Assembly: GCA_963924565.1 (NCBI GenBank)
Contig: OZ004608.1
Location: forward strand, 28,272,001-28,336,000
DNA: 64,000 bases
Direction of reading: 5' to 3'
Source of the DNA: Ascidiella aspersa
Lineage: Eukaryota
Shown here: piece after piece, positions 9,918 to 14,594 of the stretch
Layout of the letters: each line of letters begins with the position of its first letter
How positions within the stretch are numbered: the first letter of the stretch is position 1
The notes under the pieces: generated by a model
What the model saw: only the letters and a program-made list of their open reading frames with translations
What the model was told of the DNA's origin: nothing
Databases searched by the model: none
Position numbers and translations under genes: made by a program

Positions 9918-10427
9918 CAGGGAGTCGAACCGTTTGACTTTTCCGGTTCAGGTTCGGTTCGGGTTCAAGGATTTTTTTGGAGTCGGTTGAGTTTCGGTTT
10001 CGGTTTCGAGCCGGTTCGGATACAATATTGGTTGCGCTAAATCTAAAAATGTGGCTCAATAAATGTAAATAATAATATTAAATTGCAACTTGTGTTAAAT
10101 TTAGTAACGTGACGTAGGCCTATTAAAAAAATCAGCAGCTGATAATTGAAATATCTGAAGAACAAAAAATCAACGTTTTATTTAATCAATATTCCATTTT
10201 TGTAAACATTTCGAAACATGGCATAACTTTACTCTGCAAAATACAAGTTGTGACGTAATGCTGGAGTGAACCGCTTTTTTGATAAGTTCTGGTTCGGTTA
10301 AGGTTATTTCAAAATATTTGGTTCAGTTCCGGCTCCTTAAAATCTTACAGAAAGCGGTTCAGGTTCGGAAAAATTTAGCCCAAAACCGGTTTATAAAGTT
10401 CCGGTTCGGTTACGGTTCGACTCCCTG
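9918..10427. mobile_element. hAT-like MITE with GGTTC subterminal repeats
   Basis: Perfect TIR CAGGGAGTCGAACCG / CGGTTCGACTCCCTG; exact 8-bp TSD AAAAATAC. Confidence 0.85.
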
Positions 10428-10652
10428 AAAAATACCCATTGTTCCAGTAAATAAATTACAATGCTGACTCATCAGTAAATAAAAAGTGGGTTATTTCGCT
10501 AATAAGCAAGCATATTTGAAGATTTTTGTCAAATTGCAGAATTTTTTATAGACTTTTTTTATGCTATTTTGAGAAAAGTACAGGGTCTTCACAAAACACT
10601 AACTTAATTGTTGTCGTATTTGTAGCCTAATTTGCATTTCTACTTAAAAATT

Positions 10653-11756
10653 ATGCTGTTGCGTTTGTTCAATAGAACCTTGAAAACAAGGATTCCCAGC
10701 AAAGATAAACCTTGTTTTAAAAGTACAATCTCGTATGTTCAAGGACAATCGCCCAAGCCAAGCACACGGGAGTATTTTTACTACATTGATCACCAAGGCC
10801 AACTGTTTCTGGATGATGCAAAAGTTAAAAATTTTATATCGTGTTTTCAGGATAAAGAGTTTCTTGCGTTTTTCTTCAGTAGAGTTCGTTTGAATCAAAC
10901 CGGACAATATCAGGACCAGTTTCCATATTTTTCACCTTGTGGAAGGGAGCGAAATTATATTCGGTAGGTTTTGGTATATAAATTTTATTTAAATATAGTT
11001 GCTTTGAGAATTTCAAGCACTTGTCTGGAATCCTACCACATTTTTGTACAGGGTTCTAACATTATTTGGATTTATACTTTGACCTGATGAAGCACGGTTG
11101 TGCGAAAGCTTGTCGAGAATCAAATACAATTTGTCTTTATACAGTGCCACCTGATTTCTCTATTTAACATTATTTGGGTGGGCCAAGTAGTAGTATAATC
11201 TTTTTCAACTTCCTTTTCATTTTTTCCTTGCAATTTCAATTCAGACGACCCGTTTCGTTACTGTAAAACATGTAGTACGATTTTAGACCAGCACCGGAAT
11301 TCATAACTTTCTTATTGCAAAGCAACTTTGCTGTATGATACATAATATGTTCTATTCAATTTTAGAGCTTAAGACGAATATTTATTTTCCCATTTTAGAT
11401 GTGATGACCTGCCAATTGTGTACACCCATATTGTAACAAAGGCTTTGGGAGATACAGAGGAGTACTATTTGTCTTACGGAAACACAGGAGACAAGCTTAC
11501 AGTAAAGTTTACACCAGAAAAGCTTTGCATGCTCCCAGACAGCGGACGAGTTTATCATCCAGCTCATACCAAGTGTGGTGCCATTGGTCTGGTGAAATCT
11601 AAGCTTGCAATTGAACTAAGTCAATATTTCGGCTATCCAGGTGACGTAGATGGGACAAACGCCACAACTTTGCCGTCAAAATTTACTTGGAACGGTGTCA
11701 CATACACCCTGACCAACGAACTTGTTGACTTGGCAAGAAGAAAGTTAGACAGATAA
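10653..11756 (+). CDS. C8orf82: UPF0598 / C8orf82 homologue; 2 exons
   Basis: Exons 10653-10963 and 11399-11756, phase-2 GT-AG intron. Joined product reads YVQGQSP...REYFYYIDHQGQLFLDD...CGRERNYIR|CDDLPIVYTH...GRVYHPA...GLVKSKLAIELS, recognisable as the C8orf82 family. The basic N-terminus may be a mitochondrial presequence (inference). Confidence 0.9.
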
Positions 11757-11758
11757 AC

Positions 11759-13039
11759 ATGTTACCAATATCACAGTTTAAAGCGATCATTTCACTGTGC
11801 ATTTTGTATTTTCTGCAAGGTATCCCATATGGTGTTCAAGTTAAGGCTTTGCCCATGTTTCTGTATAGTTCCATGGGCTTATCAATGGATACATCTACGA
11901 GAACTGCGTTACTTATGATGCCATGGGTATTTTGTAAACCACTTTTAGCCATTGTTAAAAATACAAAAAACGAGCATTATTATCTATTACATGGCGGTAT
12001 ACTAATAAGTGCTTTTCTAAATCTGTGTATGTTTATTCTTGCTAATCAATGGGAATATTTAAGTCAATACTTATTGTTTAGTATTTCTGTAATAGTTTTA
12101 TTTATGATAAATGTTGCCTCTGTTTGTATTGACATCACAACTGACAATTTGGCAATATCATCAGCACTGTCTGAAATCGATCTTAAATTTTTGGGCATAA
12201 GTAATAGCATACAAGTTGTAGCTTACAAAGTTGGTGCAATGTTCGGGGGAGTTTTTTTAAGCCAGGTTTTTGAAATTCAAAGGGGGTTTCTGGCTGTTGT
12301 AGCTCTAAATTTAATTAGTTTATTGGTTTTACCCAAACTTCTTTCTAACTCAGCTGATCCACAGGATAAGAGTGGCAAACATGAACCAGGAGCTACATTG
12401 AGTGGGCCAAAAGTACAACTTACATTTGAAATATTTTGCCTAGTTTTATATATAGTGTTGTATAAGTTAGGTGAAAATGGAGCTAGCACCATATTCCCAT
12501 TATTGGCAATCAACAAAGGAATTCAGCAAGATAGCATTGCCCTGTTTTCTTCTCTAGTTTTTGAACCACTTTCATTGTTTGGCTCCATACTTGGTGGTGT
12601 TGTGTGGTCAATGTTTACTCCTAAAAATCCCATGCAAACTTTATGTGTTTTTTTGTTTGTGATTGGTCTCCTGAGAATAATTCCCCTAGTGATAGAATAT
12701 CAATGTTTGATTACCACAAACTGGGTAAATTTATGGCCCCTGGGCCCAGCCTTACTTTCACTATTAGGAGGTGCTATGAGCACATTGACATTTACTTTAA
12801 TGATGACCATGACTCACAGAGTAGACAGTTCACAAAGGTCCTCACTATATGCAGTTTTATCCTCAATTGAGGTATGTGGCAAATTGCTGTTTTCTTCTTA
12901 TGTAGGCGCTTTATCAAGTTATTTGGGATTGCATGTATTTGTTGTGTTTTGTGGCCTTGTTGTATTGCCAACTTTTGTGCTATTGCCTATATACAGATGT
13001 TTGGTGATATCACCTCAAAATAAATTGAAACTTAACTGA
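11759..13039 (+). CDS. MFSD3: MFS transporter, MFSD3/AmpG-like; single exon
   Basis: 426-aa hydrophobic ORF with LYFLQGIPYG, QVVAYKVG, YKLGENGASTIFPL and IEVCGKL, matching MFSD3-type motifs. Confidence 0.88.
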   Translation: MLPISQFKAIISLCILYFLQGIPYGVQVKALPMFLYSSMGLSMDTSTRTALLMMPWVFCKPLLAIVKNTKNEHYYLLHGGILISAFLNLCMFILANQWEYLSQYLLFSISVIVLFMINVASVCIDITTDNLAISSALSEIDLKFLGISNSIQVVAYKVGAMFGGVFLSQVFEIQRGFLAVVALNLISLLVLPKLLSNSADPQDKSGKHEPGATLSGPKVQLTFEIFCLVLYIVLYKLGENGASTIFPLLAINKGIQQDSIALFSSLVFEPLSLFGSILGGVVWSMFTPKNPMQTLCVFLFVIGLLRIIPLVIEYQCLITTNWVNLWPLGPALLSLLGGAMSTLTFTLMMTMTHRVDSSQRSSLYAVLSSIEVCGKLLFSSYVGALSSYLGLHVFVVFCGLVVLPTFVLLPIYRCLVISPQNKLKLN

Positions 13040-13139
13040 AACATAGCAAATGCTTTTTTTATCATAAAATGAAAAAATTATACAGACATTATGGCACCTC
13101 TGCTGCTTATTAAAAAAATAAATTAGTGCAACATTAACA

Positions 13140-14594
13140 TTACAAATACTGAAGTAAATCTTCACCACCTTCCAAATCATCCTCATTGGGATCTTCTTTT
13201 GGTGCAATAAGAAGGAAAGACTCATCTTCTTTAAAAACAATAGTACTTAAGGCCATTTTTGGGTTGTCTGCCACTAATCCCTTCATCCAACTTTGTAATG
13301 CTGTTGGTGATTTGTAGTCTGTACAAGCAATAGCATAGACAGAACCTTCAACCTTTTCCGTATCTCCGATTATTTGTGATATGTCTTCCTCCAATCTGCT
13401 TATTGAGGCTAGGTTCTTTTCTAAGTTTATTGTTGGAAAATATTGTTCTTGGGAATACAGTTTACCACCTTCGTTTATGGGTTTGTCAGTTTTCCAATCA
13501 GTCTTGTACATTTCCGACCACCACTGTTTTGCTGAAAGTATCTTCACTTTATCAGACTTTATTTCTAAAGCTTTGGGATCAGAACGCATTACAAAGTACT
13601 GGACAGTCTTTGTCTTGTAGTAAACCATGTGTGGTCCCTCAATGAAAATAGGTAACTTTGTATCATGCTTAGCCAAAGCAGTCTTCTGATCAGGTGTTTG
13701 GACACTTATCACGCAATCAACTTGGTCTGCATTTAATACCTCATCACATTGACTCTTATCAACTGCGAAGTATTTGTAATCTCCATCAATGCCTGGATTC
13801 ATTTGTCGCAGGCCATTGAAAGCAATCTCCACTGGAGATAATGCATTCAGCTTAGACAGGGCAATAGGGTGTTTACTAAATTGTAAAACTCTTGGATACC
13901 AAAACAAAGCAGACCGGACAGACCACGTTACCGGACTGTAAGTACCAAACAAGTCTGTTGCTTTAATAAAAAGTTTCTCATTTGGAATTGCACCTCCTTC
14001 GGATATCAGTCGTACCAGTTTTTCACCTAGGTTGTGGTCTGCCATTTTGTCACCATAGGCAGCAAGGAACCATTGGCTTCTTTTAATTCCAGTGTGTGGA
14101 CTGTCTGGAAAGCAATCCAACAGTTTTAGGTAGGCAGATATTTCATGCTCCACTTTAAATCTTGTCATTGCATTCATGGCAGCAGTTATAAATTCCCGGT
14201 GGCCTCGCTTTGTTTCACCGGCTTCTTTTAGCCAGACGTCAACTAATTTGTAAAACACTCTCTTGTTCTGATCGAGCACATCAAAGTACTCGGCCTCATC
14301 AACAAGATCTAATTCTTGTTCTGCTTTGTTAATATAGTAATCCAACAACCCATAGTCTTCTTCTTCTGGGCTACTTTCTTTATCTTGTCTTGTATCAAGA
14401 TCCAACTCATGCTCTGCTATAAGTTGTTTTTTATTGTTTATTTGTTTACAATGTGAAGCAGAGTGTAAACCAACCAGTGCTGTTCGACCGCTGGACAGAC
14501 TGTAGCATGGTACATTGTTTGTTATGCAAGCAACTGTCCAATTACCTCTGCATGCACATTTTCTCAGCAATCTTTGACAAAATTGTGATGTCAT
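13140..14594 (-). CDS. ECSIT: ECSIT (Toll-pathway intermediate / complex I assembly factor); single coding exon
   Basis: 484-aa ORF with RGHREFITAAM...AYLKLLDCFP, Q..ALAKHDTKLPIFIEGP and EGSVYAIACT...LQSWMKGL...NPKM, characteristic of ECSIT. Confidence 0.88.
   Translation of the reverse strand: MTSQFCQRLLRKCACRGNWTVACITNNVPCYSLSSGRTALVGLHSASHCKQINNKKQLIAEHELDLDTRQDKESSPEEEDYGLLDYYINKAEQELDLVDEAEYFDVLDQNKRVFYKLVDVWLKEAGETKRGHREFITAAMNAMTRFKVEHEISAYLKLLDCFPDSPHTGIKRSQWFLAAYGDKMADHNLGEKLVRLISEGGAIPNEKLFIKATDLFGTYSPVTWSVRSALFWYPRVLQFSKHPIALSKLNALSPVEIAFNGLRQMNPGIDGDYKYFAVDKSQCDEVLNADQVDCVISVQTPDQKTALAKHDTKLPIFIEGPHMVYYKTKTVQYFVMRSDPKALEIKSDKVKILSAKQWWSEMYKTDWKTDKPINEGGKLYSQEQYFPTINLEKNLASISRLEEDISQIIGDTEKVEGSVYAIACTDYKSPTALQSWMKGLVADNPKMALSTIVFKEDESFLLIAPKEDPNEDDLEGGEDLLQYL

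What the first reader, a model, noticed from the sequence alone, without database searches (positions are those of the whole stretch)
10653..13039. C8orf82 and MFSD3 separated by only 2 nt (AGA-TAA-AC-ATG): candidate true dicistronic mRNA in an animal
Seen: the C8orf82 stop (11754-11756) is followed by AC and then the MFSD3 ATG (11759), on the same strand in a different frame. There is no room for a 3'UTR, poly(A) signal or promoter. The only nearby AG (11751-11752) lies inside the upstream CDS in purine-rich context, so it is a poor trans-splice acceptor. Stop readthrough would not fuse the frames. Known: ascidian operons are resolved by SL trans-splicing and often contain single-exon genes; from memory, human C8orf82 and MFSD3 also lie a few genes apart at 8q24.3. 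Inference: one unresolved transcript is translated by termination-reinitiation or leaky scanning, which would functionally link two orphan proteins through ancient chordate microsynteny.
Basis: partly seen in the sequence, partly recalled or inferred. Interest (0 to 1): 0.88.

Follow-up and report, generated by a model that had tools for sequence, protein, structure and literature searches.

The report
Sea-squirt two-gene mRNA without spacer
In this sea-squirt genome the stop codon of C8orf82 and the start codon of the transporter gene MFSD3 are 2 bases apart. Both genes lie on one spliced RNA, and a distant sea squirt has the same arrangement, so the pair is a real operon that cannot follow the usual Ciona processing rule. 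How MFSD3 gets translated is still open.

Summary
The stop TAA is at 11754-56, followed by AC, then ATG at 11759. The upstream gene is a two-exon DUF4505/C8orf82 gene. The downstream gene is a single-exon MFSD3 orthologue whose first Met aligns with the homologues' first Met. Both are single-copy in the genome.

New evidence:
- Stranded RNA reads cover the junction without a dip, and a spliced 2038-nt transcript contig runs from 10566 to 13035 across both ORFs.
- Four metagenome contigs from a second, deeply diverged tunicate show C8orf82 exon 2, TGA, 6 nt, then the MFSD3 ATG. ECSIT, the neighbour on the other side here, is absent there.
- The genome carries 573 copies of the Ciona-type spliced leader, so trans-splicing is available.
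- The canonical Ciona rule adds poly(A) to the G of the acceptor AG. It cannot apply here: no AG lies between stop and start, and using an upstream AG would delete the stop codon.

My best reading (about 0.5) is an SL-type operon. Its transcript mostly persists as a dicistronic mRNA that serves C8orf82, and MFSD3 comes from a trans-spliced minority. Termination-reinitiation remains a serious rival (about 0.3). Leaky scanning is very unlikely because 7 AUGs intervene.

No SL- or poly(A)-joined reads could be seen or excluded. An earlier scan note reports a 1-nt pair (FAM204A-WDR4) elsewhere in this genome.

The parts
10566..10652 (+). 5' end and 5'UTR of the transcription unit. The transcript contig starts at 10566. 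A possible but unproven SL acceptor lies at TTGTAG, ending at 10625.
   Evidence: X3 record 17 reaches 10566. X5 gene-strand depth is 0 in 10502-10602 and 2.9 in 10603-10703; the acceptor context at 10625 is 65% pyrimidine.
10653..10963 (+). C8orf82 (DUF4505/UPF0598) exon 1
   Evidence: PF14956, E 4.8e-41, profile positions 1-74; the splice joint 10962/11398 is seen in 10 reads.
10964..11398 (+). 435-nt GT..AG intron holding a high-copy repeat (about 11007-11208)
   Evidence: joint table and depth table. Gene-strand depth is 0 in the unique intron bin 11209-11309.
11399..11756 (+). C8orf82 exon 2, ending in TAA at 11754-56
11736..11761 (+). Junction. It holds purine-rich AGs (ending at 11737, 11740, 11744, 11748 and 11752), GATAAA at 11752-57 overlapping the stop, the spacer AC, and the ATG.
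   Evidence: RNA depth is continuous across it (bins 15, 13.4 and 8.3).
11759..13039 (+). Single-exon MFSD3 orthologue (426 aa). AATAAA at 13019-24 lies inside its CDS.
   Evidence: the transcript contig ends at 13035.
13140..14594 (-). Convergent ECSIT gene. It is not part of the unit, but its transcript contig ends at 13037 and so abuts the MFSD3 3' end.
   Evidence: ECSIT_N and ECSIT_C. (record 23).

Best explanation
This is a conserved ascidian two-gene operon, C8orf82 followed by MFSD3. It is transcribed from one start near 10566 and polyadenylated near 13035-13040.

After the single intron is removed, most molecules stay as a stable dicistronic mRNA. Ribosomes translate C8orf82 from that mRNA, and the MFSD3 ORF acts as its 3' region.

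I infer that MFSD3 is made from a minority of transcripts that receive the 16-nt spliced leader. The acceptor would be a weak AG in the last codons of C8orf82 (ending at 11748 or 11752, giving an SL plus 6-10 nt leader), or less likely the intron acceptor at 11398. Trans-splicing there destroys the upstream message.

Some C8orf82-only mRNAs may also end just after the stop. GATAAA at 11752-57 overlaps the stop, and the next AG lies at 11775-76.

What is shown:
- the gene models;
- the single spliced RNA across both ORFs;
- conservation of the pairing in a second tunicate;
- the presence of SL RNA genes.

What is inferred:
- the SL acceptor;
- the division of labour between the RNA forms.
For: - (coverage): X5 is a stranded RNA run. 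Its gene-strand depth is 13, 15, 13.4 and 8.3 in the four bins around the junction, with no dip, and no pile-up of molecule ends was flagged there.
- (shape): depth is highest at the MFSD3 5' end and falls downstream. That is the opposite of what an mRNA starting there would give.
- (intron): unique intron sequence has depth 0, so the spanning RNA is processed RNA and not raw precursor.
- (contig): X3 contig record 17 is 2038 nt with the intron removed, and covers 10566-10962 plus 11398-13035.
- the genome holds 573 copies of ATTCTATTTGAATAAG+GT in 584-bp tandem arrays, so the Ciona-type SL machinery is present.
- PMC1488885 and PMC2760879: about 20% of Ciona genes lie in operons without intercistronic DNA. 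Downstream genes are SL trans-spliced and enriched for single-exon genes. Unresolved dicistronic cDNAs are seen, and processing is thought to be either/or for each transcript.
- a second tunicate has the same pair with a 6-nt gap.
- 7 intervening AUGs argue against scanning to MFSD3 on the long RNA.
Against: - No SL-joined or poly(A)-joined read at the junction was listed.
- The candidate acceptors are poor: 25-30% pyrimidine in the window and 35-40% in the second species.
- A stop-to-start gap of 6 nt or less, retained between lineages whose MFSD3 proteins are only 37% identical, is not required by this model. It fits translational coupling better.
- The canonical Ciona geometry, with poly(A) on the acceptor G, cannot hold here. 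The locus is therefore atypical even under this reading.
Confidence: 0.5

Rival explanations
1. This is a true dicistronic mRNA. After terminating at UAA 11754-56, ribosomes or 40S subunits stay on the RNA and restart at AUG 11759. MFSD3 output would then be a fixed small fraction of C8orf82 output.
For: -: the spliced dicistronic RNA is the dominant form seen, and no separate MFSD3 5' end was flagged at the junction.
- the gap is 2 nt here and 6 nt in a deeply diverged tunicate, while the other neighbour, ECSIT, is not conserved. This looks like selection on spacing.
- the nearby AGs are weak acceptors.
- Both AUGs have A at -3.
- Restart after a full-length ORF at spacings of 0-1 nt has been shown in yeast (PMC11952965).
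- An earlier scan note, s1-788228, reports a 1-nt pair on one mRNA in this genome. I confirmed the string and the WD40-like ORF.
Against: - Restart after a 222-codon ORF is normally very inefficient without a dedicated element.
- The only TURBS-like UGGGA sits about 100 nt upstream and is not conserved in the second species.
- No significant local RNA structure was found (z -0.45 and -1.7), and there is no Rfam match.
- The organism has an abundant SL system that normally serves downstream cistrons (PMC2760879).
- The frame relation is not conserved: the offset is 5 here and 9 in L004.
Confidence: 0.3
2. The two mRNAs are separate and conventional. MFSD3 has its own capped start inside C8orf82 exon 2 or the intron, and C8orf82 mRNAs end at or just after their stop. 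The spanning RNA would be read-through.
For: -: gene-strand depth rises within exon 2 from 7.2 to 13-15. MFSD3 depth averages roughly half that of C8orf82.
- GATAAA overlaps the stop.
Against: -: 10 spliced reads account for the depth at the start of exon 2.
- The low first bin coincides with six SNPs within 70 nt, which costs reads at the 95% identity cut-off.
- There is no gene-strand depth in unique intron sequence, and no start pile-up inside exon 2.
- Coverage shows no dip at the junction.
- A start inside exon 2 would leave upstream AUGs (seen, for example near 11527 and 11649).
Confidence: 0.1
3. This is a canonical Ciona-type resolution, with the two mature mRNAs exactly abutting at one AG.
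For: This is the general rule in Ciona operons (PMC1488885).
Against: The sequence excludes it:
- There is no AG in the 2-nt spacer.
- Poly(A) on the G at 11748 or 11752 would remove the stop codon.
- The next AG, at 11775-76, would remove the MFSD3 AUG and codons 1-6. The next in-frame AUG is codon 33, beyond the invariant TM1 motif.
Confidence: 0.03

Closest known systems
Ciona operons without intercistronic DNA (Satou et al. 2006, PMC1488885; Satou et al. 2008, PMC2760879)
   Same: - The organism is an ascidian with the identical 16-nt spliced leader.
- The genes are adjacent on the same strand.
- The downstream gene has a single exon.
- Transcription runs across the boundary.
- No AATAAA lies upstream of the boundary.
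   Different: In Ciona the mature mRNAs abut but keep their UTRs, and poly(A) is added to the G of the acceptor AG. Here the coding sequences themselves are 2 nt apart, so that geometry is impossible. The acceptor, if there is one, must lie inside the upstream coding sequence. No SL junction has been seen here.
Termination-reinitiation on dicistronic RNAs (calicivirus TURBS and influenza B M1/BM2 from my own knowledge; yeast 80S reinitiation, PMC11952965)
   Same: - The stop and start lie within a few nucleotides.
- A long upstream ORF precedes the restart site.
- Both ORFs are on one RNA.
   Different: - No conserved TURBS-like motif or RNA structure was found.
- This is a cellular nuclear gene pair in a chordate.
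- Translation was not tested.
Animal dicistronic genes such as Drosophila stoned and Adh/Adhr, or mammalian SNURF-SNRPN and MOCS2 (from my own knowledge)
   Same: Two unrelated proteins are encoded on one mature mRNA.
   Different: Those organisms lack SL trans-splicing. Here an SL route exists and is the default expectation.
C. elegans SL1-type operons (cited in PMC1488885)
   Same: [quoted passage not shown]
   Different: Those operons keep a 3'UTR with AAUAAA, and the poly(A) site lies next to the trans-splice site.

Membership tests
Ascidian SL-resolved operon (Ciona type) | Same-strand neighbouring genes less than 100 nt apart | tested here: met
   There are 2 nt between the stop and the ATG.
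Ascidian SL-resolved operon (Ciona type) | Transcription across the boundary, giving a polycistronic RNA | tested here: met
   the spliced X3 contig covers 10566-13035, and stranded coverage in X5 is continuous.
Ascidian SL-resolved operon (Ciona type) | SL RNA genes present in the genome | tested here: met
   573 matches of SL+GT against 0-1 for the control pattern, in 584-bp tandem arrays; one copy reads SL, then GTAAGT, then an Sm-like site.
Ascidian SL-resolved operon (Ciona type) | Downstream cistron carries the SL at an AG at the boundary | tested here: inconclusive
   One search lists no loose end at 11740-11780. However, 174 rows were hidden, depth was about 13, and only one read-laying run is allowed.
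Ascidian SL-resolved operon (Ciona type) | Upstream poly(A) added on the G of that same AG, so that the mRNAs abut | tested here: not met
   no AG lies between the stop and the ATG. Using an upstream AG deletes the stop, and using the downstream AG deletes the ATG.
Dicistronic mRNA translated by termination-reinitiation | One mature mRNA holds both complete ORFs | tested here: met
   the transcript contig has the intron removed, and unique intron sequence has depth 0.
Dicistronic mRNA translated by termination-reinitiation | Stop and restart codons within a few nt, with the spacing conserved | tested here: met
   The gap is 2 nt here and 6 nt in L004-L007.
Dicistronic mRNA translated by termination-reinitiation | A cis element that holds the ribosome (TURBS-like motif or structure) | tested here: not met
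   UGGGA occurs only about 100 nt upstream and is absent in L004. The folds are not significant. There is no Rfam match.
Dicistronic mRNA translated by termination-reinitiation | ORF2 translation depends on ORF1 termination, with no monocistronic ORF2 mRNA | not testable with these tools
   This needs ribosome profiling, reporters and 5' end mapping.
DUF4505 / UPF0598 (C8orf82) | Full-length match to PF14956 above the gathering score | tested here: met
   140.9 and 109.6 bits against a cut-off of 27.3, covering profile positions 1-176 of 177 over the two exons.
MFSD3 (SLC33-like MFS transporter) | Orthology to named MFSD3 proteins over the full length | tested here: met
   hits to Phallusia, Clavelina, Ciona, Zootoca and Hyalella MFSD3, with 88-98% coverage for most; the tunicate clade has 100/100 support. 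The Pfam MFS_1 match alone is below the cut-off (27.2 against 33.4 bits).

The most novel reading that the evidence does not exclude
Ascidians may hold a class of nuclear gene pairs whose coding sequences are 0-6 nt apart, and whose second protein is made by translational coupling (termination-reinitiation) on a stable dicistronic mRNA. C8orf82-MFSD3 would be one example, conserved across ascidian orders. It would descend from a linkage that survives as a five-gene neighbourhood on human 8q24.3.
Probability: 0.27. Interest if true: 0.8.

Novelty: new variant of a known kind. Interest (0 to 1): 0.6.

Why it matters
How ascidian operons are resolved is still unknown. The 2006 description left open whether trans-splicing itself makes the upstream 3' end.

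A conserved pair with no spacer for either UTR breaks the abutment rule. It forces one of three outcomes:
- an acceptor inside the upstream coding sequence, so that each transcript serves only one gene;
- an upstream mRNA with essentially no 3'UTR;
- translational coupling in a chordate.

All three can be tested with this one small locus.

The pair also ties together two poorly understood proteins, DUF4505/C8orf82 and the SLC33-like transporter MFSD3. These two are still near neighbours in human, which hints at shared regulation or function.

Tried and rejected
I therefore could not fetch the genomic or transcript context of the Phallusia, Ciona, Clavelina or Logan homologues.
- Matching 'longest contig' lengths between MFSD3 and C8orf82 hits gave one coincidence only: Clavelina, where both lie on a 24,617,235-nt record. 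That shows the same chromosome, not adjacency.
- The listing of cluster members returned no accession numbers.
- The TURBS-like motif is present once but is not conserved, so I rejected it.
- RNA folding around the junction was not significant in either species.
- The Rfam scan of 10300-13300 found nothing.
- The bacterial promoter and terminator scan is irrelevant here and stayed at chance level.
- Stop-codon readthrough fusion is rejected. The frames differ in the window (offset 5), although they coincide in L004 (offset 9).
- Leaky scanning is rejected, because 7 AUGs intervene.
- Matsumoto et al. 2010 (PMC2860165) is not held in the library.
- The pile-up of 5 molecule starts at 11847 does not fit an SL joint at AG 11844-45. 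It may be duplicate fragments, and I left it unexplained.
- I did not search the joined (spliced) C8orf82 protein.

Full report
**Observation**

TAA lies at 11754-56, AC at 11757-58 and ATG at 11759-61.

The upstream gene has two exons, 10653-10963 and 11399-11756. Together they total 669 nt. The two exons match Pfam DUF4505 end to end: E 4.8e-41 for profile positions 1-74 and E 2e-31 for positions 76-176. RNA confirms the 435-nt GT..AG intron, with 10 reads and one contig.

The downstream 426-aa ORF is an MFSD3 orthologue:
- Its best hit is Phallusia mammillata MFSD3 at E 1e-106.
- Clavelina, Ciona, lizard, amphipod and sea-urchin MFSD3 follow.
- Its first Met aligns with the first Met of eight homologues, and the invariant LY.Q..PYG block begins at residue 16.

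ATG 11759 is therefore the real start. The C8orf82 C-terminus ends at about the same alignment position as ten homologues, most within a few residues. Both genes are single-copy in the 308.6-Mb genome.

I searched the spliced C8orf82 model exon by exon. The joined protein was not searched.

**The organism**

- In an MFSD3 tree the window's protein is sister to Phallusia (support 97/96), inside a 100/100 tunicate clade.
- The genome holds 573 copies of the Ciona spliced leader ATTCTATTTGAATAAG followed by GT. Most lie in 584-bp tandem arrays, and the control pattern gives 0-1 matches.
- One copy reads SL, then GTAAGT, then an Sm-like site.
- Earlier scan notes (s1-806516, s1-805345) had pointed to this leader, and I confirmed it here.

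**RNA**

Only one read-laying run is allowed. Run X5 is a stranded RNA-seq run of the same species label.

- Gene-strand depth is 12-13 at the end of exon 1.
- It is 7.2, 13 and 15 along exon 2.
- It is 13.4 in the bin that holds the junction (11714-11814).
- Along MFSD3 it is 8.3, 7.8, 4.7, 3.9 and 1.6, then 8-9 again, and it fades out by 13026.
- Unique intron sequence (11209-11309) has depth 0.

There is no dip at the junction, and no pile-up of molecule ends was flagged there. Coverage of MFSD3 is highest at its 5' end. An mRNA that began at the junction would show the reverse.

Run X3 holds a contig of 2038 nt. It lies on 10566-10962 and 11398-13035 with the intron removed, so it is one spliced transcript contig across both ORFs. 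The tool warns that a contig across two genes does not prove a single molecule. Taken with the read coverage, I conclude that a processed RNA spanning both ORFs is the main species in these samples.

No SL or poly(A) loose end was listed near the junction. However, 174 loose-end rows were hidden and depth was low, so a trans-spliced minority is neither shown nor excluded.

**Conservation**

A scan of metagenome contigs with an alignment of C8orf82 exon 2 returned 18 loci. Four of them, L004-L007, come from a single species. In it:
- C8orf82 exon 1 is 86% identical to ours and exon 2 is 64% identical.
- MFSD3 is 37% identical to ours and forms its own deep branch among tunicates.
- C8orf82 exon 2 ends in TGA (L004:6352-54).
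- Six bases (ATTACC) follow, and then the ATG of a 421-aa single-exon MFSD3.

ECSIT converges on MFSD3 in the window but is absent from those contigs. Fourteen C8orf82 loci that fall outside this close tunicate group have no MFSD3 in their flanks.

In Clavelina the two named proteins lie on records of the same length, 24,617,235 nt. That shows the same chromosome at least.

A published gene list for a human 8q24.3 deletion gives the order GPT, MFSD3, RECQL4, LRRC14, LRRC24, C8orf82, ARHGAP39 (PMC5485587). I examined no human sequence.

**Why the locus is unusual even for an ascidian**

In Ciona, operon genes abut with no intercistronic DNA. Poly(A) of the upstream mRNA is added to the G of the AG that serves as the trans-splice acceptor of the downstream gene (PMC1488885). 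Here that cannot work:
- There is no AG in the spacer.
- Poly(A) on the G at 11748 or 11752 would remove the stop codon.
- The next AG, at 11775-76, lies in MFSD3 codons 5-6. The next in-frame AUG is codon 33, past the invariant first transmembrane motif.
- All AGs just upstream sit in purine-rich sequence, with 25-50% pyrimidines against 75% at the gene's own intron acceptor. In L004 the figure is 35-40%.

**Mechanism**

I favour, at about 0.5, an SL-type operon in which each transcript serves one gene.
- The abundant spliced dicistronic RNA yields C8orf82.
- A minority is trans-spliced at a weak AG in the last C8orf82 codons, or at the intron acceptor, and yields MFSD3.
- Some transcripts may be cut just after the stop. 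GATAAA at 11752-57 overlaps the stop and an AG lies 20 nt downstream, so these would give a C8orf82-only mRNA. That would fit MFSD3 depth being about half that of C8orf82.

A near-zero 3'UTR is plausible in this species. MFSD3's own AATAAA lies inside its CDS at 13019-24. Its transcript contig ends at 13035, next to its stop codon at 13037-39, and the convergent ECSIT contig ends at 13037.

The serious rival, at about 0.3, is termination-reinitiation on the dicistronic RNA.
- In its favour: the dominance of that RNA, the weak acceptors, and above all a gap of 6 nt or less retained between lineages whose MFSD3 proteins share only 37% identity.
- Against it: the 222-codon upstream ORF, no conserved TURBS-like motif, no significant structure, no Rfam match, and an SL system that is available to serve the downstream cistron.

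Leaky scanning is very unlikely, because 7 AUGs intervene. Readthrough fusion is excluded in the window by the frame offset of 5. In L004 the frames happen to coincide, with an offset of 9. An internal promoter is not excluded, but the coverage does not support it.

**Context in this genome**

Earlier scan notes report other very tight pairs. I confirmed one string, ATGTAAAATG, ahead of a WD40-like ORF at L026:3170-3179(-). That is the site of note s1-788228 (FAM204A-WDR4). I did not test the RNA claim made in that note. Together these suggest a class of such loci rather than a single oddity.

My full-text searches found no paper describing stop-start coupling in tunicate operons. Absence from that library is weak evidence.

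**Limits**

- Each of the reads tools could be called only once.
- There are no ribosome data.

**Verdict**

It is a new variant of the known ascidian operon, and its mode of expression is unresolved.

Noticed in passing
window 13019-13039 and 13037-13140: MFSD3's AATAAA (13019-24) lies inside its coding sequence. Its transcript contig ends at 13035, 2 nt before the TGA stop at 13037-39, and the convergent ECSIT transcript contig ends at 13037. The two 3' ends meet, and MFSD3 has practically no 3'UTR. Whether the stop survives cleavage is unclear.
   Followed up: partly
window 11752-11776: GATAAA overlaps the C8orf82 stop codon, and the next AG (11775-76) lies 20 nt downstream inside MFSD3 codons 5-6. 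This could be the poly(A) site of a C8orf82-only mRNA that would destroy the MFSD3 start.
   Followed up: no
window 10300-10500 and 11007-11208: These are high-copy interspersed repeats, the second one inside the C8orf82 intron. Word depth is about 1e3-3e5 in the contig runs, and RNA reads lie on both strands with many loose ends.
   Followed up: no
window 11847: Five RNA molecules begin at exactly 11847 on the gene strand, where depth is 13. This is 8 nt before in-frame Met33 of MFSD3. It may be duplicate fragments, and it does not fit an SL joint at AG 11844-45.
   Followed up: no
L004:6352-6363: In the second tunicate the C8orf82 stop (TGA) and the MFSD3 ATG are in the same frame, 9 nt apart. 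Readthrough there would fuse the two proteins. In the window the frames differ.
   Followed up: partly
L026:3170-3179 (-) = G000:C2 about 12,016,170: The string ATG TAA A ATG sits in one exon ahead of a WD40-like ORF. I confirmed the string and the ORF but did not check RNA.
   Followed up: partly
G000:C3:5.22-5.45 Mb; L024:1460-1520 (-): These are large tandem arrays (584-bp unit) of SL RNA genes identical in their leader to the Ciona SL. Irregular spacings of about 7.7-8.4 kb within the arrays suggest insertions.
   Followed up: no
L004:2214-6000: The C8orf82 intron is about 3.8 kb in the second tunicate against 435 nt here, while the stop-to-start gap stays at 6 nt. Genome compaction alone therefore does not explain the tight junction.
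   Followed up: partly
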